Source of the DNA: Fimbriosthenelais zetlandica
Taxonomy: Eukaryota
Length of the DNA stretch: 64,000 bases
Assembly: GCA_977030845.1 (NCBI GenBank)
Contig: OZ365111.1
Coordinates: 10,850,001-10,914,000, forward strand
Reading direction: 5' to 3'
How positions within the stretch are numbered: position 1 is the stretch's first letter; every line of letters begins with the position of its first letter. Of this stretch, positions 1,181 to 25,043 are shown piece after piece. Made by a program: the position numbers and the translations under genes. The notes below the pieces were generated by a model. It was not told where the DNA came from, did no database searches, and saw only the letters and a list, made by a program, of their open reading frames with translations.

Positions 1181-4100
1181 TTACCAGAACGCATGACGTT
1201 GAGGCCATTTAGCAACTGGCACAGCCCTGGTCCTGAGGAAAAAGTCCAATCAATGAATGAGAACATATAGTTAAATTTTGTAATTAGATAATTAAGTATA
1301 TTTTAACCATTCAATTAAGCATGGCATCCACCTATCCGATTATCGGATCCGATTTTTGTAGGTCTTTTTGTCCACAAAAAATCGGATCCGATCAATTTTG
1401 ACCCGATAATCGGATAGGTGGATGCCAGGCTTTAGAATTCTCATTGGGACTTCCAGCATGACGACACTTTATTGCTATAGAAATAGAAGTTAATGGTGTA
1501 AGGTTTAGCTTGGTACTTACGGTACTCCATAGACATCACCATGATGATGCGGGGGATGAGTGGGTACATTCCATTGACAGCAACAGATGACACAAACAAT
1601 ACAAAGGCAAATGATAAAGGCCACGCAGGCAAAGACCAGAGCAGTGATAGCAATAATCCTAATTCTCCTTTCCACGTCGTCATCACCCTTGTCACAGAAT
1701 GCACCGTAGTAGCCATCATTACACCTGGAAATATTTTTACAAAGATACAATTTTGTTATCGATTTTATGTTTAGAAATTAACTTTACAAATTAATTTCGG
1801 AAGTTTTTGTTATGGATGGGGGAAGGGTTTTCTGTTGAGTCACCTAACGACTCAGCCCATCCAGGGGTACCTTATTTCCCTGTGTATAAACGGCACCTGG
1901 CTATAAACAACACCCCCTGGCCGCTCAGGTTAAAATCCATGTATAAACCGCTGATTTGTTTAGAAATCTACAAAAATCGCTGTTGTATTAACCACAGGCC
2001 GCGATTTATTGTGAAAAAAGTCGCGGCAATTACCGCCAGATTTTTTTAAAGTCAGCGAGAACCACCAAGTCTGAAGATGTAGGGCTCCGCCTGTAAAAAC
2101 CCTGGGGTCAACCAAATCAATTATTTAATTCCTTGATCTCGAGTACATCCGGGACATCTCAAAACCAGTTATCTATTAAGTGGATTGGACCCTCACTTGG
2201 CCAAGGCCGAACCTTTCTATGGGCCTGGTAGACTCGAGGCGCCTATATACTTACTCGCAACGTGGATATCCATGGTCATCATTGACGCATGTACCATAGG
2301 TACAAAGATTTAGTCCATTGTACATGTCACAGGGAGCGTCCTTCCCTATAATAGGCGAAGAGTTCTGGTTAATGACCTATTGGTAAATATGTAAATATTC
2401 GGCATATCCAATGATACATAGAAGGTAGAAAATGCAAATTATACTGAGTTAAATTAATCTTCACTATTTTAAAGCCAGAAACAGTTATCTGACAATTTCT
2501 ACACCTTACACAACATTTTGATCAATGCCATATTCTTAGATCAGACATTGATAGTAAAATAACTATTTTGGTATGTATGTATTTTTGTATCATGCCTAAG
2601 TGAGCGGCATGATTACCAGTTCTGGCAGAAGGAATATATATGGTCAAATGGTATTGTCTCCCTTCCAGAATCGAAGTTCATTTGTTTAGCCAAAAAATCA
2701 ATACACCCACAATTGTATGGTCCATATGCAACTGGGTAACCTTCGCATGAATCGCCAGTCTGACTGAGTCGGTATCCAGGGGAACATGAACAACGGTAGC
2801 TGCCTGGTGTATTGATACAGTAGTGCTTGTAATCGCCACATGGGTCATTATCACACTCATTTTCATCTGCAAATAATAAGTAAAACCTGATTAGTACCTG
2901 TTTTGCGATTTGTGTTGGGGCCGGCCGTTGCGACTGACATTTCCATAGCAGTTGCAGGTTTCCTCTACTTATGGTGCTTGAGATTCTTGCTTTCACTATC
3001 AAACTCAAACCAGCCATTTTCTTGCAGCAATATCAACAGAATTATCGGCTGTGTACTACAAGTTTTGTGGTTGTTACATTATACACCCTGTTGTACAAGG
3101 AACCTCGGCAATGGCGAAGGTCGACAAGCTTTTGCTTTGTACTGTTTTATTGATAAAAAGTCCTTGGACAATTGCTTGTCAAATATTAAGTCACTTTTTA
3201 AATATTTACCTTCACATTCGTAAAGAGTTGTCCATTCACCATTGGCCTGACATTCAACATCAAATTCCTTCCTCCCCTCTGGGGCTGTGCTCCTGTAACC
3301 AGGCTTACACTCGTAGGTCACTTTCTTTGTAAAGAGGAAGGATGAACCAGTGCGTTCAGCATTGCAGATCACTCCAGGATCACCACAGCTTATCTCTGGT
3401 GAAAGAAGTTTTCTTGTTTAAATCGAATGAACAGTGACCTTTGTTTAAAGCTTCAATGAGGAAAATTCCTCAGACATCGACTCCTTAACTCCAAACGAAA
3501 TCTCTTCCCCAAATGTCAAGCATAGAGTTTCAGTGTCGCACCATAATATTTGTAGAATGTAGCAAAGGGAGCATTCACCAAATAAGATATTCAAGGATGA
3601 ATGACATGAGGTTGAGTAATACTTACTACGGCAGTGAGGTATAGGCAGAGGTTCCCATCGACCTGACTTAGCGCAGTAAATCTCAAAATTTCGTCTTTCT
3701 GTTGGGTGAGTGCCTAAATTGACAGGTGTGCCGAAAAAGGCATTGTCAATAGCATAACCTTCGGTACATTCACAATCCACGACGTCCCCGAAGCTGCCCG
3801 ACTGTGGTACACACACAGCATTGAGTATGTTTGGAATGTCCCCGCATGGTATTCCTGCAATATCACAGGCCTTAATTATTGAAGTTCTTTACAATATATC
3901 TAACTGATAATTTCCACAAGAGCTTACGATTTAAAAAGAAACTTGTTGCACTCAATCTCAGAATCTCCTGATTTTAATTAATCAGTTAATCGTGCCACTA
4001 TAATGCCTATATGCAACGTAAACTCGCGCAAGTCTTTGATTGATTTTTCAGTGTTAAACTAACCAATAATAAGACCCTTGCTTACTTGAGCAAGTTACAC

Positions 4101-10509: not shown

Positions 10510-12579
10510 TCAAAAATCATTGGGGTCGAAATCCATTCCATTTCTTATGGCTCTGGCATTATTCCTCTGCTGTTCCAGTGGTATTGGAGGCAGACTTTTT
10601 CTGGCAGACTCTATTTTAGCCAGTCGACGATTCACCTGTACCTTGTATTCCTCCCTCTTCTCTGTGGCCATTAATGCTATCTGGTTGACAGCAGCACTGC
10701 ATTCTCTATCAAGATCCATGGCAAGCAATTCAATAGATTCTCCTTCTCTTGGGTAAATCAGCTTTGGAAGTTTCGACAACGGTGCCAGAAGGAATTTACC
10801 GGATACATCTACATACATAGAAGACAATGACTCGATTGCGATCGTAGACTGAGTAGCGTTTTTTGCATAGTCATACATCAAAGCGCGATTGAACTCACTT
10901 TCATAATCCAGCATGTTTTGAGCCTTTTGGTTGAAGCCCAGGATGTCGCCATAAAACGTGGTCTCGACTCTGTTTGCCACCTGGGAGAAAAACTTGACCA
11001 GTTCTGACCAAATTGTGCACACTTCACTTAAGGCATGGAAACCTTTCATCAGAGTTTTCTGAATGTTTTCCATGTCTGTGTTCGTCAAATCTAGCGATTT
11101 GAGTTCAGCCATGGTTTTCTGGAGTTGCGCCCTACTCTCCTGTGCACGTTTTTCGGAAGTAATATTCTGCTCCTCATACAACTTCAGCGACTCCTGAGCC
11201 TTTTGAACTTTGAAATGAGCATTGTCTCGCATAACTGCCAAGGCTGAAGGCTCGTGCTCTGATGTTTCCTTCGGTTTAGGGGCAGGGATTCTGCTCGGTG
11301 TTGGATTGACCTTGGCTAATCTGGTGATTGTAGCGTCCAAACTCTGGACTTCGGAGAGAAGGCGTTCAAATTCTGCTTTAATCAATGTTAGGGCTTCAGA
11401 ATCACCGTGCAGGTTATGTGCTTTAATGATGGAATCAATTTGTTTGCACAATCCAGCAGCAGATCTTGTTATCTCCTGCATTTGGGTGTTGATGTCATCA
11501 GCTGAATTTGATCTTGCTAGTTTCGCATTCAATGTAGTAAATGAGGTTTCAACCTTGATCACCCCACCGACCGGGTCACGGAAGCAGACTTCATTATTCT
11601 TAACATCGAAGCTCCTGAGTAGACCAATAATCAATGTACGGCAGTGTTGAACTGAAAAAGTTGTTGTAGTATCCAGGTTAATTTGTGGTACATCTTGGCA
11701 CATGGGTTCTTCTTGTGGTGCGTTGCCTCTTGCCCTGGAGATGCAATCCATTGCCTGTGATCCCATCCGCCCAACTGCTGGGATGACTTTCCTGAAGGAC
11801 AGGACCATGTTGATGGTCTGCATGGCTTCTTGGGCGAGCCCTGCCCCGATAATCGCCCAATTGGATGGCATACTGTCCATGGCATCTTTATACAGCTTTC
11901 TTGCTTCATTGACAGTTTTTTCCATCTCTTCTTTTGCCTTGCGACTCTCCTCCTGCTCCTCCTTCTCTGAAATCTCTTGTGCCTTCAGAATCTCCAATTT
12001 CTGAAGGTTTTCCTTCAGGACCTGTTCGTGGTGACCTTTGGTCGATGCTGCAGCCTCTAGGAGTTCCTTGATCTCGTCCATGACTTTATGGTACTTGAAT
12101 TCGGTGCCGCGGGCCAAATCAGCACATCTCTTTGCACGTTTCCCCAACTTTTCCAGAGTGTCCCTTGTTGTCATCTCAAGATCTCTGTCTGTGCCCATGG
12201 CAGCAGCCCGAACAACTTCATTCAGAAGATCTGGGATATTTTTGGTCATCAGGTGTATTTGATCCATGTTAATGTGAGCGGTATGAAATGCATCATGGCC
12301 ATCGTTTGAGATTTGTACCAGACTTGCCCTCAAAGAATGTGGATATTTGATGTGTTTAAACCCATCTTTTGGAGGCTTGGCAGCTAGAGATACGTCATTT
12401 TCATGGGTGACTAGCATGAGTCGACCAAGCACAGAAATGGCCATGCATGACGGTGACATCCCTTCTAACAGTTCATAATGATCAGTCATCAGAACACATT
12501 CTTCTTCACGGTCCTCTCGTCGAGAAATGCTTCGTTCTGCATTCTCTATTCTCACCAGATCATTTGCTGCCTCCGCCAT
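10510..12579 (-). CDS. Uncharacterised alpha-helical coiled-coil protein (about 689 aa), candidate alpha-pore-forming toxin-like component (gene A)
   Basis: Uninterrupted 699-codon ORF, GC-richer than its flanks. The first ORF ATG (12609) lies upstream of an acceptor (TTCTCTTGGTTTACAG|G, AG at 12589-12588), so the likely start is MAEAAN at 12579. A long charged heptad region (EQVLKENLQKLE...EEMEKTVNEARKLY) is followed by the moderately apolar segment WAIIGAGLAQEAMQTINMVLSF (11859-11794) and a second coiled coil. No signal peptide. The motif KPPKDGFKHIKYPHSLRASLVQISNDGHDAFHTAHINMDQI recalls, from memory only, the uncharacterised zgc:162509/PTHR33488 family; this needs verification. Confidence 0.9.
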   Translation of the reverse strand: MAEAANDLVRIENAERSISRREDREEECVLMTDHYELLEGMSPSCMAISVLGRLMLVTHENDVSLAAKPPKDGFKHIKYPHSLRASLVQISNDGHDAFHTAHINMDQIHLMTKNIPDLLNEVVRAAAMGTDRDLEMTTRDTLEKLGKRAKRCADLARGTEFKYHKVMDEIKELLEAAASTKGHHEQVLKENLQKLEILKAQEISEKEEQEESRKAKEEMEKTVNEARKLYKDAMDSMPSNWAIIGAGLAQEAMQTINMVLSFRKVIPAVGRMGSQAMDCISRARGNAPQEEPMCQDVPQINLDTTTTFSVQHCRTLIIGLLRSFDVKNNEVCFRDPVGGVIKVETSFTTLNAKLARSNSADDINTQMQEITRSAAGLCKQIDSIIKAHNLHGDSEALTLIKAEFERLLSEVQSLDATITRLAKVNPTPSRIPAPKPKETSEHEPSALAVMRDNAHFKVQKAQESLKLYEEQNITSEKRAQESRAQLQKTMAELKSLDLTNTDMENIQKTLMKGFHALSEVCTIWSELVKFFSQVANRVETTFYGDILGFNQKAQNMLDYESEFNRALMYDYAKNATQSTIAIESLSSMYVDVSGKFLLAPLSKLPKLIYPREGESIELLAMDLDRECSAAVNQIALMATEKREEYKVQVNRRLAKIESARKSLPPIPLEQQRNNARAIRNGMDFDPNDF

Positions 12580-13822
12580 TATTTTCCCTGTAAACCAAGA
12601 GAATTTCATTTGATAATATATATTAATAATTTAGTCAAAATCAGTTGTTGTAATTGCTCACATTTTTTCTCAAGATCCCCCTACATGCCCTTTTATTTGG
12701 ATGTATAATGCTATTAATTCCACTCAATCAGCATATATATGTATGCTCTCTACTGTAACAAGGCCAAAGAAAATAAATGTTTTGTTTAGCGTCACCAACA
12801 CCTGGTAAAAGTTGTGGGTGACATGGCTATTTTAAGACCCCCCCCCCCCCCCCCCGCACATGTCACTATGACATAACCCCCCGACTTAGATATGAAAGAA
12901 TAATATTAAAAGCAAGGCTGGGACATAAAGTAAAATTTATTAAAATTATGATTTGGTAGGGTAAAATTATGTGGAATAAAATTTTACAGAAATTGCCCCG
13001 ATTGTATAAAGGTGAAGTATACAATAAAAGAAGAATGTGACAATGTAAAATTAATGAGGTAAAACATGATAATTACATGATGGATGGTGAGAATAAGTGG
13101 AGAATGACGAGTTAATGTAATTGAGAAAAAAACAAAAACAAAGAAGGGTGAGGGTGGGTGGGAGAAGAAGGGTACCGGGTGGCGAGCAGAGGTGAAGTGA
13201 AGAGGGAGTAGAGAGTGGAGAGGTTATGTGGAGAGGTTATAAGGAGAGGCCAGTGTGGACACCTGGCCATAGATGTGAGAATTAGGCCAGGAAGAAGGAA
13301 GTTGAGTAAGGAGACGCCGGGGGGTGCCACAATGATCCCGCCTTAGCCGAAGCCAATGCGTACACAATTTCAATGTTTTGCCACACAATTATAGTTGAAG
13401 ATGTAAAAAATCGAAGACCCATATGGAAATACAAGTCGTTTCCATCGAGGAATAATCGCTAAAAACATCTATTTTCTTTGGCCTGATATTTCCTAATACT
13501 CTGTCAATATTATTCCTTGTCACATTATGTCCAATATCTTCACGGTACATGTACCGGTACTTTCATTTACACAACTCAAGAGGATGCACTTCAGGCATAC
13601 AATATTACATTAACATGATACATAGCCTACATGTAACTTACATTCTTGTTGACTTTAAATTTCTAAAATGGTTCTTCAATGATATACCAAAAACCTCACT
13701 TATGAATTTACCAAAAATTAATCTATACATGGATTCATGAATAACAGACTTAAGTGCAGTCTATTGAGATTGTACAACCCTAAATATAACTGCTAAACTT
13801 ATAACAAGTTCCTGCGACTTAC

Positions 13823-14050
13823 CTTGTGATTGGAAGTGTTCAGGAGTGTTGTTAATTAATAGTAAGAGACGACTAATCTAGTCTTTAGTCCAATGTTCCA
13901 ATGTCTCAGTTAGCAGTATAGCTTGTATGTGCGCTGTAGACAGCGAAGTACTGTATCGCCACTGAATGTCTACTTTCAGTCTGGCCCTAAAGCTCTGACT
14001 CGCTGAACAAAACTGAACTGCTCAGAACCAGGGTGGCCGCCATCTCTTTC
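13823..14050 (-). other. Putative non-coding first exon and TSS region of gene A
   Basis: Consensus donor CAAG|GTAAGT (GT at 13822-13821) can pair with the acceptor at 12589-12588. YY1-like GAGATGGCGGC at about 14036-14046 on the minus strand; YY1 motifs typically lie just downstream of a TSS. Confidence 0.55.
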
Positions 14051-14051
14051 C

Positions 14052-14373
14052 TTAAAGGGGCAACATCTCATTACAATTTGCCCCCCGAAGACTTTGGCTG
14101 GGATTAGACTGGATAAATAGATGACCGTTATTAATTGGACATTTTTGGGATGAAATCGCCATATAACCGAGCATACTTGTTATCCTTGGCTACTCTTTAG
14201 TATTTTTCAGAATCATAAAGATACATTTAAATGAATTATATCCATAAGAAATTTCCCTAAGGATAATTACCAAACGATATTTTCCTATACCAATGGTCAA
14301 TATAATTTATAATGGTTCTTGTAAATGCATACATATAGTCACAGATAATTATTTCAGGCTGATGCCCCTTTAA
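14052..14373. mobile_element. TTAA-flanked non-autonomous DNA transposon (Kolobok-type ends)
   Basis: TTAA|AGGGGCAACATC ... GCTGATGCCCCT|TTAA: TTAA on both sides, 7-bp perfect terminal inverted repeat AGGGGCA, 314-bp non-coding interior. RR termini with a TTAA target fit Kolobok rather than piggyBac (CC ends). Confidence 0.6.
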
Positions 14374-14960
14374 ATTTGTTCTCTTTCCGGAACCTGAGTC
14401 TGCAAAGATCGGATTGTTGGGAGGGGAGGGGAAAGCCCCAGACCTATACTTCGTGACTATCCACCACACACTGACCACAAAATGGACATAAAACTGTTTT
14501 ACTTTCATTGACATTGATATTAAATAACCTGGCGTCCATTGTCAATATTTATTCCCCATCATTCCAGTGCAACAATTATGTGATGAAAGAGAATTGAAAA
14601 AAAGGAGTAGTTTATAGGAGAGTTCTTTATACAAAGTCGGGAAAGGGTCATAAATGTCTGGCACTGACACAGGCATGTGTGTTTTGTGTATCTTGTGGCC
14701 ATGTGGGATATATCTTGAGATAAGCAAGCACAGACAAATCCTACAAGTTTAATATAGAAACCAGTGGGATGTTTCTTAAAATTCATTTTAAATCTATAAT
14801 TGATGAAAATGCAAACCTGCCCCAAATCATCTAGCATTATTTTAAAGTTGTCATTGCAAGTTAGTCATATATCTATTAAATAGGAAGCGGGGAAAGGATA
14901 TAAATAGATACTGTTGGCATGGAACAAAAGTTCCAAAGTGATGCATCATTTCAGTGATAC

Positions 14961-15023
14961 TCACTTTCATTTTCCCGGTCATGACTCATCAGTTCTCGCT
15001 TACTCAGGAGGAAAAGTGAAACC
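14961..15023. promoter_or_regulatory. IRF - AP-1 - IRF motif cluster between the divergent genes A and B
   Basis: TCACTTTCATTTTCC (14961-14975; reverse GGAAAATGAAAGTGA, IRF-E/ISRE), TGACTCA (14982-14988, AP-1), GGAAAAGTGAAACC (15010-15023, canonical IRF1/2 site). Confidence 0.65.
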
Positions 15024-15572
15024 ATAGAGACTAGATGTCTACTCTCTCTGGGTAAAACCAGACACTACTGGTGTAGTCTCTCTGGTAAAACCAACCTATT
15101 TTTATCCGTTTGGCAGGTCCTGGGTAGATGTAGGCCTAGATGATATATTGATGTGTATATATACTGGGATGCGGCCAATGTGTGCAGGGGCCATTGTATC
15201 ACAAAATATGCAATATCAACTGATATATTTGCACTGAATCTTTTTTCTGAAACATGCCCTAGACTAAGCGATTGGTGGATGTTAGGTGTCGTAAAGTATT
15301 GCTGCCCTCTCAGGCTATGGAAATTCCATTGTATCTAACCTCATGGGGCAGTAGGTGGGTTTATCCTTTTTAAACGCTGTTCAAAACCCATTGTGAGATG
15401 TCATGGCAATATTGAATAAATGCCAATTTCACGAGCAAATTCTAATTTTACTATAACAAATACCATATGGCCTCCTTCTCGAAAGACTCACAGATTATGT
15501 CGAATTTCTCAGCATTGTCAATGTACCTGAGTTTTTGATGACGATGACAGATGGCCTTCCATAGAGCGAAAG

Positions 15573-15651
15573 CTTTCATTTCCCGATCTCGCCCACTGAG
15601 GCTTGTGTATTCCACAGACCTGTGTGTGGTGGTCCGCCTGGGAAGTTTTCC
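15573..15651. promoter_or_regulatory. Additional IRF/EICE-like and kappaB-like motifs proximal to gene B
   Basis: CTTTCATTTCCC (15573-15584; reverse GGGAAATGAAAG, GGAANNGAAA type) and GGGAAGTTTTCC (15640-15651, imperfect kappaB). Confidence 0.35.
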
Positions 15652-15820
15652 TTCACCCGGATACTCACAAAGAATATATTATTTAATCTTGTTCGGACCT
15701 GGAATAGAATTTTATTCTGCTTCTAAACTGAGCAGTGTGAAGACGAGCGAGACTTCAGTGGTACAGACGTCAATTTTTGTAGTTCACTATTCGTTGATAA
15801 AAGGCTGGGTCAAGTAGAAA

Positions 15821-17203
15821 ATGGCATTTTTCTTGCCCGGTGGGAATAATGCCTTTGGAGATGTTTTCGGTGGACTGGGAGGTACTATAGCTACATTACA
15901 ACAAATGAAGGATGGGGAAGAAGATCAGCCTGAACATAGAATCAAAGCTAGGCCAGACAGGTCTAAAAACATGCCACTGGATACAAATGACCAAGAGGAT
16001 GCAATAAGGTAAGACTATAATATATATTGGAAATTTATCCAAATTACTGGCTTTCAAGGATTTTAATGGTTTTTCATTTTAAAAGAAATGAATTAATTAT
16101 ATAGTATCCAAGTATATAAATCTCATCATAAATCATGACTTATTTTATTTTCAGTCTTACAAAGACTTGCATGACAAAAACCTCAAGTGCATTGGTTGCC
16201 ACCATAGGCGACTGTGAAAGGATTGCCCAGTCAGTTAAAGAAGTGGTCGAAATCAGCAAAAATGCCAGTGACGGTGCCTCTCTTGTTCAACAGGTATTTA
16301 ACATATACAAATGATGTTAATTTTAATAACTTTTAATTTATCAAGTATCTGCCACATTTCTAGGCGTTCCTATGCCAGTTTTTTTGTTTGTCATTGTACC
16401 CATAGGCTACATCTTGTCTTACGATGCTATTCAAATTGCTCACTTTACAGATGCACAGCAAATTAGAGATGGCAGAAAGAACTGTTTCACAACTGAATCA
16501 GTGCATCTCAGACGAAATGGTGCACCTCACAGCTGAAGTATCATCTGCAGAACAAGAAGTGACGGCGAGCAACCGAAAGGTAGACAAGAAAGAGGAAGAG
16601 GTGAAGATCCATTACGAAACTTATGTTAATGCTGAAGTTATGTGTGTGAAAGCATTGAAGGAGGAAAAATCTTGGCAGGGGGATTTTGTACAAATGAGTA
16701 TGGGCGAAATAATCTCTGCAATTCAAACCTCTGCTTTGGTCTTGGGAATAGCTGCTTTAGGTGGACCCATAGGATTGGCGATAGGTTATGCCTTTCTGTG
16801 GTTAACTGCAGACCGTGCAAGAAAAGCCCGTATGGACAGGGCTTATGCCGCAGCTCAGAGGCTGAAAAATGCTGAGGCCAACTTTGAAAATTGTCAAGAG
16901 TATCTGGAAGAATGCAAGGCCATTTATGAAGAGGCAGAAAACGAGCTGGATGTGGAGTTGTCGGCTCAAGTGATTAACACCATGCAGTTGAAGCGGATTC
17001 AGGCTTTGCAGAAATTCATCTTCTCTGTTGGGGAAAACATGAAGGATGCCAACTTGTTGGTTGGGAAGCTCTCGGCCCGGGCTGGGACGGCAGCCTTTAT
17101 GACTGAATGTGGCACGGTGAAAGAACTTATCATGGTTCTACAAGAGATGCAGACCAACTTTGATCAGTTCGGGAAGCTTGCTCCAGCTTTAGCTTATAAT
17201 TGA
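15821..17203 (+). CDS. 359-aa coiled-coil protein with a central Gly/Ala-rich hydrophobic hairpin, candidate alpha-pore-forming toxin-like component (gene B)
   Basis: Exons 15821-16008 (AG|GTAAGA), 16155-16293 (TTTTCAG|T ... CAG|GTATTT, open frame, not in the ORF track) and 16451-17203 (TTTACAG|ATG), 1080 nt in one frame. Hydrophobic stretch IISAIQTSALVLGIAALGGPIGLAIGYAFLWLTA (about aa 196-229) is followed by basic RARKAR and flanked by long heptad helices. No signal peptide. Confidence 0.88.
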
Positions 17204-23804: not shown

Positions 23805-25043
23805 TCAACACATACTGAGGTTATGCAGTTCACAAATGGAACTGTCCCGGACAATGGAACTCTTGCCTACCCCACCGTTACATTGGGTATTGGTATGCGA
23901 TTGTCCTTCTTGGCAGAGACGGCAGCCTACCCGTTGGTAGACAGTGGCAGCTGGTAAAGTGGGGTTCCGACTACTTGACCGACTGAGAGTTGTAGTCCTA
24001 CTAGTACTGGGCATTAAGGGCGTGTCTCTTTCAACATCCTCATCCCTAAGATGATTCCCTTGACAACACGATGAACAGCATGGTATCCTTCGGAATATAT
24101 TGATATTTCGGTCAAACAATATCAAGACTAAGGGGTTGATTGCAGAGTTGGACCAAGCAATGAAGGTCAGGAGTTTGTATATCTTTGTGGGTTGGGCAAA
24201 TTTGGGGTCCACTAAGGTTAAAATGAAGAGTGGGTACCAGCAAAGTATAAAGAGGCCTGTTATTGTCATTAGGACTCGGGCTCGACTTAAAGAATCCTGG
24301 ACAAGTTTGCGGATATTTTGGTTTTGTGTGTTGCCTCTAGAGATAGCAATTGAGGCTCGAACAAGAGAGGCCAAGCGGTGGGTGGAATTGGCCTGGACAT
24401 GACGGTAGAAGAATACAAGGTAGTATATGGCCCCTATCATGGCCAGAGTCATAATAGCAATCCACATAGCATGTACTACATAACTTTTGATTGTGCCATA
24501 GACAAATATACAGTTTCCAATGAGGTCATTGTAATTGAAGTCACCACCAATGATGGTCGGACCTAAATGGATGATGATACTTCCAATGTATACCATGACA
24601 ATGCCAAAAATTACACAGCACAGGCTTCCTTTAGCCTCCCCTCCAACATTATGTTCACTAAACGTATAAGCTTCACAACAAATCATTGCTACAATATTGA
24701 AACCCGAAGCAGTAACCACAACAACGTAGGATCCACCAAGAATGGTGCAAAAACTGGGAGCCACGTCGCGAAGTAAACTCTGGGCGAAGGGCACGCAGTA
24801 GCCACACTTGATAATATCTAAGACACAGCCATGGACAATGAAAGCACTGGTCATCTTACGTAATGGCTTACATGTAATGATACAAGCAATCACTGCCAGA
24901 TTGAGGAACAGCCCAGAGGCAGCCGTTATGAAGAGATAGAGTGCCTCGTTAACATTCTCTGATGGAACGCGTTCGTCGATATCGCCAATTTGGTCAAGGT
25001 CATGGATGACCGGCACAGGGCTCACATCATCATCGTATTCCAT
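23805..25043 (-). CDS. Intronless orphan class A (rhodopsin-like) GPCR, 412 aa, loosely SREB/GPR88-like
   Basis: Seven hydrophobic helices. TM1 GLFLN, TM2 AFIVHGCVLD, TM3 Cys (FCTIL) with ECL2 Cys (GNCIF), TM6 CWYP, TM7 NSAINPLVL. Cys cluster and Ser/Thr-rich C-terminal tail. The subfamily assignment is tentative. Confidence 0.93.
   Translation of the reverse strand: MEYDDDVSPVPVIHDLDQIGDIDERVPSENVNEALYLFITAASGLFLNLAVIACIITCKPLRKMTSAFIVHGCVLDIIKCGYCVPFAQSLLRDVAPSFCTILGGSYVVVVTASGFNIVAMICCEAYTFSEHNVGGEAKGSLCCVIFGIVMVYIGSIIIHLGPTIIGGDFNYNDLIGNCIFVYGTIKSYVVHAMWIAIMTLAMIGAIYYLVFFYRHVQANSTHRLASLVRASIAISRGNTQNQNIRKLVQDSLSRARVLMTITGLFILCWYPLFILTLVDPKFAQPTKIYKLLTFIAWSNSAINPLVLILFDRNINIFRRIPCCSSCCQGNHLRDEDVERDTPLMPSTSRTTTLSRSSSRNPTLPAATVYQRVGCRLCQEGQSHTNTQCNGGVGKSSIVRDSSICELHNLSMC

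What the first reader, a model, noticed from the sequence alone, without database searches (positions are those of the whole stretch)
10510..17203. Head-to-head gene pair resembling a two-component ClyA/Hbl/YaxAB-type alpha-pore-forming system in an animal
Seen: two dissimilar, signal-peptide-less helical proteins (about 689 and 359 aa) are transcribed divergently with 3.2 kb between start codons. Each has a coiled coil / central apolar segment / coiled coil layout, and immune-type motifs lie between them. Established: bacterial ClyA-superfamily toxins (ClyA, YaxAB/XaxAB, Hbl, Nhe, Ahl, Smh) are long helical bundles with a hydrophobic hairpin, and the multi-component ones are encoded by adjacent genes and act together. 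Inference: A and B may be co-regulated subunits of an inducible pore, acting as an antimicrobial or cell-death effector. I do not recognise a described animal system of this kind.
Basis: partly seen in the sequence, partly recalled or inferred. Interest (0 to 1): 0.9.

Follow-up and report, generated by a model that had tools for sequence, protein, structure and literature searches.

The report
Conserved two-gene helical membrane-hairpin module
The two divergently transcribed genes are real, and they belong to two unnamed protein families that sit side by side, or are fused, in fishes, a gecko and two fungi, so they probably work together on membranes, but a link to bacterial ClyA-type toxins could not be shown.

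Summary
The genes exist as described. A is one 689-aa ORF on the minus strand. B has 3 exons and 359 aa on the plus strand, and the start codons are 3.2 kb apart.

A belongs to a large family with no name and no Pfam model. A profile search found 1375 clusters, in sharks, lungfish, teleosts, squamates, a bivalve and fungi. B is a very divergent member of a second unnamed family of about 335 aa: a long helix, a Gly/Pro-rich apolar tip, then a long helix. It scores 30.6 bits against that family's profile; 2000 shuffles reached at most 11.2.

The two families are adjacent in 7 of 10 A loci examined, head-to-head in both fungi, in smelt and in this window. B-then-A fusion proteins also exist. The fungal B partners carry lectin domains. 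Profile comparison hints that A and B are distant paralogues.

ClyA/YaxAB homology is not. Sequence hits to those toxins are no better than coiled-coil noise, and the fold searches, run on weak models, were not significant.

My best reading is a previously undescribed eukaryotic binary membrane-acting defence module that is analogous to two-component alpha-helical pore formers.

The parts
10510..12579 (-). Gene A: intronless CDS, 689 aa plus stop. Member of a large unnamed eukaryotic family of about 700-aa helical proteins.
   Evidence: ORF. Profile search found 1375 clusters at E<=1e-3. The A2 profile scores 604.8 bits, E 2e-182, on this ORF. No Pfam or PDB sequence match.
12190..12579 (-). 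A aa 1-130: conserved N-terminal domain. It holds the most hydrophobic helix of A (aa 42-58) and the best-conserved block, aa 51-100.
   Evidence: Nearly invariant columns P45, L51, G52, D62, S82, Q89, F98, A101, M105 and I108. Share of the commonest residue is 0.55 in aa 51-100. AF2 pLDDT is 66-87.
11869..12189 (-). A aa 131-237: one long helix, about 105 residues in the model. It aligns to the helix before the tip in the B family.
   Evidence: AF2 helix H131-235. hhalign places A 118-268 on B family 32-174, score 30.8, E 0.0052.
11794..11868 (-). A aa 238-262: moderately apolar segment after a conserved proline.
   Evidence: KD19 1.09. P238 is kept in 78 of 82 relatives, and the family median of the maximum KD19 after it is 0.97. 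Alignment.
11260..11793 (-). A aa 263-440: hypervariable middle region with low model confidence.
   Evidence: Share of the commonest residue is 0.16-0.25 over aa 251-450, against 0.35-0.55 in the flanks. pLDDT is below 50 over aa 233-443.
10513..11259 (-). A aa 441-689: conserved C-terminal bundle of four long helices. Its first part resembles the B-family helix after the tip. It ends in an acidic-aromatic tail.
   Evidence: AF2 helices H446-494, H503-558, H562-601 and H616-662 with pLDDT 63-84. hhalign places A 441-514 on B family 188-261, score 36.9, E 7.6e-4; 80 shuffles reached at most 22.6. Tail.
12580..15820 (.). Spacer of 3.24 kb between the two start codons. It contains one ISRE-like site at 14963-14974 and one NF-kB-like site at 14430-14439, both on the minus strand.
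   Evidence: Motif counts against 200 Markov shuffles. The only repeat is a 31-nt pair. No function is shown.
15821..16008 (+). Gene B exon 1 (aa 1-63, phase 2): Gly-rich then acidic N-terminus, outside the family profile.
   Evidence: ORF and GT donor.
16155..16293 (+). Gene B exon 2 (aa 63-109): the start of the helical part. The family profile match begins at aa 87.
   Evidence: AG/GT junctions. The profile alignment starts at B aa 87.
16451..17203 (+). Gene B exon 3 (aa 110-359 plus stop): helix, apolar tip, helix, then a third helix. This is the core of the B-family match.
   Evidence: Top hit among all 1671 window ORFs with a B-family profile built without B, E 2.6e-9. 30.6 bits, E 9.8e-12 for the full protein; 2000 block shuffles reached at most 11.2 and the reversed sequence scored -5.8. 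AF2 helices H2-103, H105-209 and H214-248.
16703..16813 (+). B aa 194-230: Gly/Pro-rich apolar tip with a central GGPIG, the presumed membrane-inserting hairpin.
   Evidence: KD19 1.88 and a 36-aa apolar stretch with 6 Gly/Pro. It aligns on the family tip of type IPI(I/V)G.IAG.
17054..17098 (+). B aa 311-325: family signature after the second long helix (window LLVGKLSARAGTAAF; family L..LAGKA.VA).
   Evidence: Aligned by HMMER and by MAFFT. The same motif occurs in the Mycena partner as FLSRLAGKASV.

Best explanation
A and B are the two partners of an old eukaryotic two-gene module that, as far as I can find, has not been described.

What each partner looks like (shown):
- B is a helical hairpin. 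Two long helices pair antiparallel and carry a glycine/proline-rich apolar tip at the turn.
- A is a larger soluble helical protein that appears to be built on the same scaffold. It has an added N-terminal domain and a hypervariable insert after its own, weaker, apolar tip.

How I think it works (inferred): the two proteins associate through their long helices. B's tip, helped or triggered by A, inserts into a target membrane and damages or permeabilises it. This makes the pair a defence effector that works like a two-component alpha-helical pore former of the YaxAB/XaxAB type. In fungi the B partner carries a lectin domain that would direct it to glycans. The vertebrate B proteins, including this window's, carry none.

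Shown: the genes, the two families, their repeated adjacency, the fusions, the lectin fusions and transcription of both genes. Inferred: physical association, membrane insertion, permeabilisation and a defence role. I put the 'functionally coupled pair' part at about 0.85. The figure of 0.45 is for the whole statement, including membrane damage.
For: 1. A-family membership: the profile search found 1375 clusters, and named members come from sharks, lungfish, teleosts, squamates, a bivalve and the fungi Allomyces and Mycena.
2. B is a member of the neighbour family. It scores 30.6 bits, E 9.8e-12, with a collinear alignment that puts tip on tip. 2000 block shuffles reached at most 11.2 bits. 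It is also the top hit of an unbiased scan of the window's ORFs, E 2.6e-9.
3. Adjacency was found in 7 of 10 A loci.
 - Head-to-head: this window, Osmerus (L001), Allomyces (L014) and, with marginal B-family support (E 0.013), Mycena (L015).
 - Tail-to-tail: Salmo (L006).
 - Tandem: Brachyhypopomus (L009) and Paroedura (L010).
 - Sources.
4. Fusion proteins with B at the N-terminus and A at the C-terminus: P0065/P0168 and P0100/P0169 are single ORFs on Logan contigs. P0020 and P0075 are gene models.
5. The salmon contig L007 carries A and the spliced B partner, so both are transcribed in one RNA sample.
6. All 17 B-family members examined have an apolar tip with KD19 1.9-2.4, 25-36 aa long, with 4-8 Gly/Pro. 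The AF2 model of B pairs the flanking helices with pLDDT up to 91.
7. The fungal B partners carry lectin domains: Jacalin in Mycena (E 2.2e-12), and in Allomyces a region matching the lectin-like bacteriocins pyocin L1/L2 (E 1.1e-5).
8. The A and B profiles resemble each other in two collinear blocks, scoring 36.9 and 30.8. 80 shuffles reached at most 22.6.
9. Defence-type traits: extreme divergence (about 23% identity within A), a hypervariable middle, many paralogues, a broken copy in python, and TRIM and C-type lectin neighbours.
Against: - There is no functional or structural datum for any member of either family.
- Neither protein has a signal peptide. Secretion or release is therefore unexplained, and an intracellular role is equally possible.
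- The vertebrate B tips are only about 26 aa long, too short for two full membrane spans.
- A has no strongly hydrophobic segment.
- Adjacency is absent within 10 kb in a shark, a python, an oyster and one eel B locus.
- Fold searches gave only generic long-hairpin matches, namely Tc-toxin channel helices, chemoreceptors and Smc.
- The B model covers exon 3 only and was built without an alignment.
- The Mycena B assignment is marginal, E 0.013.
- The immune-motif evidence is near chance.
Confidence: 0.45

Rival explanations
1. A and B are true but extremely diverged homologues of the bacterial ClyA superfamily (ClyA, Hbl/Nhe, YaxAB/XaxAB, Cry6Aa). They would form the same kind of oligomeric alpha-helical pore, and the pair would have been inherited or transferred as a cassette.
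For: - Every weak hit to a toxin model places the toxin's hydrophobic head on the B-family tip.
 - B exon 3 against XaxA: E 4.4e-4.
 - Salmon B partner against NheC: E 0.16.
 - B-family profiles against HblB and against ClyA 1qoy: E 0.15 each.
- The YaxAB pore chain appears among the fold matches, TM 0.40.
- The subunits look paralogous and are encoded side by side, as in the multi-component toxins.
- A teleost gene with an HHpred probability of 99.46% to Cry6Aa has been published (PMC12107551), so ClyA-fold genes do exist in fish.
Against: - All of these hits lie far below the curated cut-offs: 11-20 bits against 125-420.
- SMC, Rad50, tropomyosin and GCN4 matches outrank or equal them for the same proteins.
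- The A-family profile finds HblB only at E 0.93.
- No Foldseek match reaches E <= 0.001.
- A is twice the size of any ClyA-family subunit.
- A pattern scan of 185,579 bacterial and archaeal genomes found no relative of the B family. That scan detects close relatives only.
Confidence: 0.2
2. The pair is a non-lytic intracellular membrane system. B would be a hairpin-anchored coiled-coil protein of an organelle or lipid-droplet membrane. A would be its soluble cytosolic partner, acting as a tether, scaffold or membrane-remodelling factor.
For: - Neither protein has a signal peptide.
- Short Gly/Pro-rich apolar hairpins between coiled coils are typical of monotopic organelle anchors. This rests on established knowledge and was not tested here.
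- The pair is conserved from fungi to vertebrates.
- Both families share an acidic-aromatic C-terminal tail that could be a common docking motif.
- There are weak matches to ESCRT-III (CHMP1B, E 0.12) and to PspA.
Against: - Distribution is patchy, with very low identity (about 23%), a hypervariable middle, many paralogues and a pseudogene. These traits are unlike housekeeping machinery.
- Lectin domains on the fungal B partners point to glycan targets outside the cytosolic face of the cell's own membranes.
- TRIM and lectin genes are neighbours.
- The ESCRT-III and PspA matches are at noise level.
Confidence: 0.3
3. A and B are unrelated coiled-coil genes that are neighbours by chance, and the shared layout is a by-product of composition.
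For: - BLAST and narrow profiles saw no B relatives.
- Coiled-coil composition creates many spurious matches.
Against: - Adjacency of the same two families recurs in seven loci spanning fungi and vertebrates.
- Fusion proteins exist.
- B's profile score lies far outside 2000 composition-preserving shuffles.
Confidence: 0.03

Closest known systems
YaxAB / XaxAB binary alpha-pore-forming toxins (ClyA superfamily, bacteria)
   Same: - Two dissimilar helical subunits without classical signal peptides, encoded by adjacent genes.
- One subunit carries a hydrophobic helical hairpin at the tip of a long coiled coil.
- The subunits are probably distant paralogues.
- Weak matches align the toxin head on B's tip.
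   Different: - No significant sequence or fold match.
- A is about 690 aa, roughly twice the size of YaxA, with an extra N-terminal domain and a hypervariable insert.
- The host is eukaryotic.
- The vertebrate B tips are only about 26 aa long.
- Pore formation is untested.
Tripartite ClyA-family toxins (Hbl, Nhe, Ahl, Smh, Mak) and single-component ClyA
   Same: An elongated helical architecture with a central apolar head, and gene clusters of paralogous components. HblB, NheC and ClyA turn up as weak hits.
   Different: The hits are E 0.15-0.9 amid coiled-coil noise. This system has two components, not three. No beta-tongue is evident.
Teleost 'Cry6Aa homolog' HOG0034670 (PMC12107551)
   Same: A fish gene with a ClyA/HlyE-type fold by HHpred (99.46%), discussed as a pore-forming immune gene. 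It is a published precedent for this kind of protein in fishes.
   Different: About 1.2 kb of coding sequence, reported in Cypriniformes and Pangasiidae as a single gene with no partner mentioned. I could not obtain its sequence, so its relation to the B family is untested. My B-family profiles did not hit Cry6Aa in the PDB.
Lectin-fused eukaryotic pore formers (natterin-type Jacalin plus aerolysin proteins)
   Same: In Mycena a Jacalin lectin domain sits N-terminal to the membrane-acting module, and there is no signal peptide. This matches the logic of glycan targeting joined to membrane attack. The comparison itself rests on established knowledge.
   Different: Those proteins are beta-pore formers with a single component. 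Here the module is all-helical and binary.
Apolipoprotein L family
   Same: Similar size to B, helical with a hydrophobic hairpin, and an innate-immune membrane channel in vertebrates. One B-family exon gave a weak ApoL match, E 0.0097.
   Different: The match is below the Pfam cut-off (15.8 against 25.9 bits) and was seen in one member only; ApoL is not among the 25 families most often matched by the nine teleost members. ApoL acts alone, without a conserved partner gene.

Membership tests
ClyA superfamily (ClyA/HlyE, Hbl/Nhe, YaxAB/XaxAB, Cry6Aa) | Sequence or profile match to a family model above its curated threshold | tested here: not met
   No Pfam hit. NCBIfam XaxA gave 19.6 bits for B and 15.2 bits for A against a cut-off of 125, and NheC gave 11.2 against 420. 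Profiles against PDB sequences gave HblB at E 0.15-0.93 and ClyA at E 0.15, outranked by tropomyosin and GCN4.
ClyA superfamily (ClyA/HlyE, Hbl/Nhe, YaxAB/XaxAB, Cry6Aa) | Fold: an elongated 4-5-helix tail bundle with a head subdomain that carries a hydrophobic beta-tongue or helical hairpin | tested here: inconclusive
   The A model has mean pLDDT 59 from a 4-sequence alignment, and its best match is Umb1 at E 1.3e-3, TM 0.14. AhlC, HblB and SmhA appear only at E > 1. The B exon 3 model (pLDDT 67, no alignment) is a long two-helix hairpin plus a third helix. The YaxAB pore chain matches at E 0.18, TM 0.40, among Tc-toxin, chemoreceptor and Smc hairpins.
ClyA superfamily (ClyA/HlyE, Hbl/Nhe, YaxAB/XaxAB, Cry6Aa) | Multi-component members: partner subunits encoded by adjacent genes | tested here: met
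   Adjacency in 7 of 10 A loci, plus fusion proteins.
ClyA superfamily (ClyA/HlyE, Hbl/Nhe, YaxAB/XaxAB, Cry6Aa) | Subunits are paralogues that share the fold | tested here: inconclusive
   hhalign of the A family against the B family gave two collinear blocks, scoring 36.9 (E 7.6e-4, probability 25%) and 30.8. 80 shuffles reached at most 22.6.
ClyA superfamily (ClyA/HlyE, Hbl/Nhe, YaxAB/XaxAB, Cry6Aa) | Soluble-to-membrane conversion and oligomeric pore | not testable with these tools
   No assay or complex prediction was available.
A family (unnamed; includes Salmo salar LOC106610933, si:dkey-85k15.7-type proteins and Allomyces AMAG_03096) | Full-length match to the family profile of about 700 positions | tested here: met
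   604.8 bits, E 2e-182, covering profile positions 4-688. Nearly invariant columns are kept.
B family (unnamed; includes Oncorhynchus nerka LOC115138996 and Anguilla LOC118232640) | Collinear profile match including the apolar tip and the L..LAGKA.VA motif | tested here: met
   30.6 bits, E 9.8e-12, with profile positions 30-286 on B aa 87-345. Shuffles reached at most 11.2. E 2.6e-9 in the window scan. Identity to the salmon member is only 15%.
B family (unnamed; includes Oncorhynchus nerka LOC115138996 and Anguilla LOC118232640) | Two coding exons with the intron inside the apolar tip | tested here: not met
   That intron is shared by salmon, smelt, knifefish and gecko. The window's B has three exons, with its introns after aa 62 and aa 109, and an unsplit tip. 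B is therefore a divergent branch.
Apolipoprotein L (PF05461) | Pfam match above the gathering score | tested here: not met
   One knifefish exon scored 15.8 bits against a cut-off of 25.9. There was no hit for B, and ApoL is not among the 25 families most often matched by the nine teleost members.

The most novel reading that the evidence does not exclude
The A+B pair is a previously unrecognised binary alpha-helical membrane-attack system found across opisthokonts. It is either unrelated to bacterial ClyA toxins or too distant from them to recognise. It would have been kept, or moved between lineages, as a two-gene cassette for hundreds of millions of years. Fungi would aim it with lectin domains, and jawed vertebrates would use it as an innate immune or cell-death effector.
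Probability: 0.35. Interest if true: 0.9.

Novelty: new variant of a known kind. Interest (0 to 1): 0.8.

Why it matters
Known animal and fungal pore-forming effectors are mostly beta-barrel formers (aerolysin/natterin, MACPF, gasdermin) or single helical proteins (ApoL, MLKL-type). A conserved two-subunit helical system would add a new class to eukaryotic membrane-attack proteins.

It would also give a first functional hypothesis to two protein families that have no name. One of them has more than a thousand sequence clusters.

The pair is also an unusually clear case of gene-pair conservation. It shows the same head-to-head arrangement in fungi and fishes, and it has fusion forms. That makes vertical inheritance against cassette transfer between eukaryotes directly testable.

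Tried and rejected
**Searches that found nothing useful**
- Pfam, NCBIfam and PDB sequence searches with the single proteins gave nothing above threshold.
- The k-mer homologue search saw only 3 relatives of A and none of B. It greatly understated both families; the full HMMER scan corrected this for A.
- tblastn with B, a narrow 9- or 10-sequence B-family profile and hhalign all missed B's family membership. Only the profile broadened with gecko, knifefish and fusion sequences found it.

**ClyA-family hits**
- I first took the XaxA hits of both A and B as a lead. I rejected them as evidence after seeing equal or better SMC and Rad50 hits for the same proteins.

**Structure prediction**
- The models, and therefore the fold searches, are weak.
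- Full-length B could not be submitted, because it has no single reference and I did not type it.

**Other dead ends**
- An ApoL-like reading is not supported.
- Pfam did not detect a lectin in the Allomyces partner. A PDB sequence search did.
- Pattern scans of public collections failed with the diverse alignments and found no prokaryotic relative with the narrow one.
- Literature searches for gene symbols found one incidental mention, salmon head kidney. Nothing turned up for the assembly of P0002.
- I could not determine which species the window comes from.

**Technical failures**
- One search used the wrong frame and was corrected.
- timed out.
- One search is invalid because it read a stale file after an hhmake error. 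It was redone.

Full report
**1. What is in the sequence**

Gene A is one uninterrupted ORF on the minus strand. Relatives begin at the ATG at 12579, giving 689 aa (10510-12579 with the stop). An upstream ATG at 12609 would add 10 residues.

Gene B lies on the plus strand. The ORF list and the raw sequence give three exons, 15821-16008, 16155-16293 and 16451-17203, with canonical GT-AG junctions. The product is 359 aa with no internal stop. The start codons are 3,241 bp apart and the genes point away from each other.

B has a 36-residue apolar stretch (aa 195-230, Kyte-Doolittle 19-window 1.88) with GGPIG at its centre. A has no window above 1.4, and its 'central apolar segment' (aa 238-262) reaches only 1.09. 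Neither N-terminus looks like a signal peptide.

The spacer holds one ISRE-like and one NF-kB-like site and no GAS site, which is close to chance. The window has no tRNA or Rfam match. It has about 40% G+C and also carries an intronless rhodopsin-type receptor gene and an EGF-domain exon. This fits a vertebrate genome, but I could not name the species.

**2. Gene A belongs to a large unnamed family**

Pfam, NCBIfam and PDB sequence searches gave nothing above threshold. The word-indexed search found three relatives.

A full HMMER scan with their profile found 1375 clusters at E <= 1e-3 and 855 at E <= 1e-10. Every named member is 'uncharacterized'. The named members come from:
- salmonids, including one that carries the zebrafish-type name si:dkey-85k15.7;
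- a knifefish, Lates, smelt and lungfish;
- chimaera and sharks;
- gecko, skink, Pogona and python;
- the pearl oyster Pinctada;
- the fungi Allomyces macrogynus and Mycena leptocephala.

The fungal genes lie on large contigs among ordinary fungal genes, so they are not contamination.

The window's A is a divergent member. It is 60% and 36% identical to two unnamed relatives and about 16-26% identical to the rest.

Conservation is highest in an N-terminal domain and in the C-terminal helices. It is lowest in the middle, aa 251-450. The AF2 model (mean pLDDT 59) shows the same split. The helices are confident, including one of about 105 residues and a C-terminal four-helix bundle, and the middle is unreliable.

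**3. Gene B and the conserved neighbour**

B had no relative by word search, BLAST or narrow profiles.

The loci of A relatives, however, carry a neighbour gene of 332-339 aa with no Pfam domain and the same layout as B: a helical region, a Gly/Pro-rich apolar tip of the type GIGIMFIPIIGLIAG, and another helical region. Its relatives occur in salmonids, pike, eels, tarpons and smelts.

A profile of this family finds the gene next to A in Salmo salar, Osmerus eperlanus, Brachyhypopomus and the gecko Paroedura. In all four the gene has two exons, with the intron inside the tip.

I then broadened the profile with these genes and with the N-terminal parts of fusion proteins. The window's B scores 30.6 bits against it (E 9.8e-12 for one sequence). 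The alignment is collinear over profile positions 30-286, with tip on tip and the signature L..LAGKA.VA matched by LLVGKLSARAGTAAF. By comparison, 2000 block shuffles that keep local composition reached at most 11.2 bits, and the reversed sequence scored -5.8.

In an unbiased scan of all 1671 ORFs of the window, B's third exon is the top hit at E 2.6e-9. MAFFT gives the same register.

B is therefore a very divergent member of the neighbour family, about 15% identical to the salmon member. Its exon structure differs and its tip is longer.

**4. Linkage, fusion and transcription**

| Locus | Arrangement | Spacing |
|---|---|---|
| This window | head-to-head | 3.2 kb between starts |
| Osmerus L001 | head-to-head | 2.2 kb |
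| Allomyces L014 | head-to-head | about 1 kb |
| Mycena L015 | head-to-head | about 2.8 kb |
| Salmo L006 | tail-to-tail | 1.5 kb |
| Brachyhypopomus L009 | tandem | 2.1 kb |
| Paroedura L010 | tandem | 5.2 kb |

Sources for the table are. The Allomyces neighbour hits the B profile at E 3.2e-8. The Mycena neighbour is marginal (E 0.013 among 2283 ORFs), but it is the best non-family ORF in the search and carries FLSRLAGKASV.

No partner lies within 10 kb in the shark Stegostoma, the python Liasis or Pinctada. One eel B gene has no A within 10 kb.

Fusion proteins with the B part first and the A part second exist. Two are single ORFs on Logan contigs, each seen twice (P0065/P0168 at 1096 aa and P0100/P0169 at 1032 aa). 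Two are gene models, from Tiliqua and from Lates japonicus.

A salmon Logan contig carries A and the spliced B partner in convergent orientation. Both are therefore transcribed in that RNA sample.

Repeated adjacency in different orientations across fungi and vertebrates, together with fusions, is strong evidence that the two proteins function together.

**5. Hints about function**

All 17 B-family members examined have an apolar tip of 25-36 aa with KD19 1.9-2.4 and 4-8 Gly/Pro. The AF2 model of B exon 3 pairs the two roughly 100-residue helices antiparallel, with pLDDT up to 91, and puts the apolar stretch at the turn.

The Mycena partner begins with a Jacalin lectin domain (48 bits, E 2.2e-12). 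The Allomyces partner begins with a region matching the lectin-like bacteriocins pyocin L1/L2 and putidacin L1 (E 1.1e-5). Two different lectin folds on the same module suggest glycan targeting, as in many defence toxins.

A-family genes are intronless in animals, highly divergent and multi-copy, with a fragmented second copy in python. They sit near TRIM genes in the shark and C-type lectin genes in smelt.

Profile-profile comparison of the two families gives two collinear blocks:
- A 118-268 on B family 32-174, score 30.8. This block includes A's apolar segment on the B tip.
- A 441-514 on B family 188-261, score 36.9, E 7.6e-4.

Eighty column-block shuffles reached at most 22.6, and the reversed alignment scored 25.1. 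A thus looks like a B-type scaffold with an added N-terminal domain and a hypervariable insert after the tip. This is suggestive only, because hhalign's probability is 25%.

**6. Comparison with ClyA-type toxins**

By sequence the test fails. B against XaxA gives 19.6 bits and A gives 15.2, against a cut-off of 125. The salmon partner against NheC gives 11.2 bits against 420. The B-family profiles reach HblB and ClyA at E 0.15, and the A-family profile reaches HblB at E 0.93. SMC, Rad50, tropomyosin and GCN4 matches equal or outrank these in every search.

These hits do put the toxin head on the B tip. Any helix, apolar stretch, helix protein would do the same.

By fold the result is inconclusive. 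No Foldseek match reaches E <= 0.001. For A, ClyA-family entries appear only at E > 1. For B, the YaxAB pore chain appears at E 0.18 (TM 0.40) among Tc-toxin channel helices, chemoreceptors and Smc hairpins. The models were made before the deep alignments existed, and both prediction jobs are spent.

A pattern scan found no bacterial or archaeal relative of the B family.

The literature holds one precedent for ClyA-fold genes in fish, a 'Cry6Aa homolog' with HHpred probability 99.46% (PMC12107551). I could not compare it with B. I found no paper describing either family.

**7. Verdict**

The idea of a functional pair is strongly supported and extends far beyond animals. A membrane-directed defence role is plausible but inferred. 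ClyA membership is not shown.

I rate the coupled binary module at about 0.85, the membrane-damaging defence mechanism at about 0.45, and true ClyA homology at about 0.2. The main rival, a non-lytic intracellular membrane scaffold, stands at about 0.3.

Failed or invalid calls are listed under Tried and rejected.

Noticed in passing
window 10513-10530 (A C-terminus) and 17186-17200 (B C-terminus); alignments A2 and /scratch/Bfam.fa: Both families tend to end in an acidic-aromatic tail (A...DPNDF...DIDQF; B family...DDQFF...ELQFY). 46 of 82 A members and 11 of 13 B members have an aromatic residue among the last three. This may be a shared docking or sorting motif.
   Followed up: partly
window 23805-25043 (-): Intronless 412-aa ORF with a rhodopsin-family 7TM domain (Pfam 7tm_1, E 3.8e-16). 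It is an ordinary neighbour gene and I did not characterise it further.
   Followed up: partly
window 2613-3017 (-): An ORF holding a calcium-binding EGF / FXa-inhibition type domain, probably one exon of a larger gene.
   Followed up: no
L012 16350-18436 (-), Liasis olivaceus: A second A-family copy about 4 kb downstream of the intact one, on the opposite strand. It is split into four ORF pieces in more than one frame, so it has at least three breaks and is a likely pseudogene.
   Followed up: no
L001 13350-18603 (Osmerus eperlanus); L011 16463-22166 (Stegostoma): The genes next to the A-family genes are immune-type: two C-type lectin genes in smelt and a TRIM (RING, PRY/SPRY) gene in the shark.
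   Followed up: no
L007 (Salmo salar Logan contig, 4761 nt): A and the spliced B partner lie on one RNA-derived contig in convergent orientation, with the genomic 1.5-kb spacing. Their 3' ends therefore appear to overlap or abut in transcripts.
   Followed up: partly
window 15026-15090: A 31-nt imperfect direct repeat (74% identity, 34-nt spacing) in the A-B spacer, about 730 bp upstream of B's start codon. Its significance is unknown.
   Followed up: no
L001, L006, L009, L010 against window 16451-17203: The intron inside the apolar tip is kept from teleosts to gecko, in the same phase, but it is absent from the window's B. B has two different introns further upstream.
   Followed up: partly
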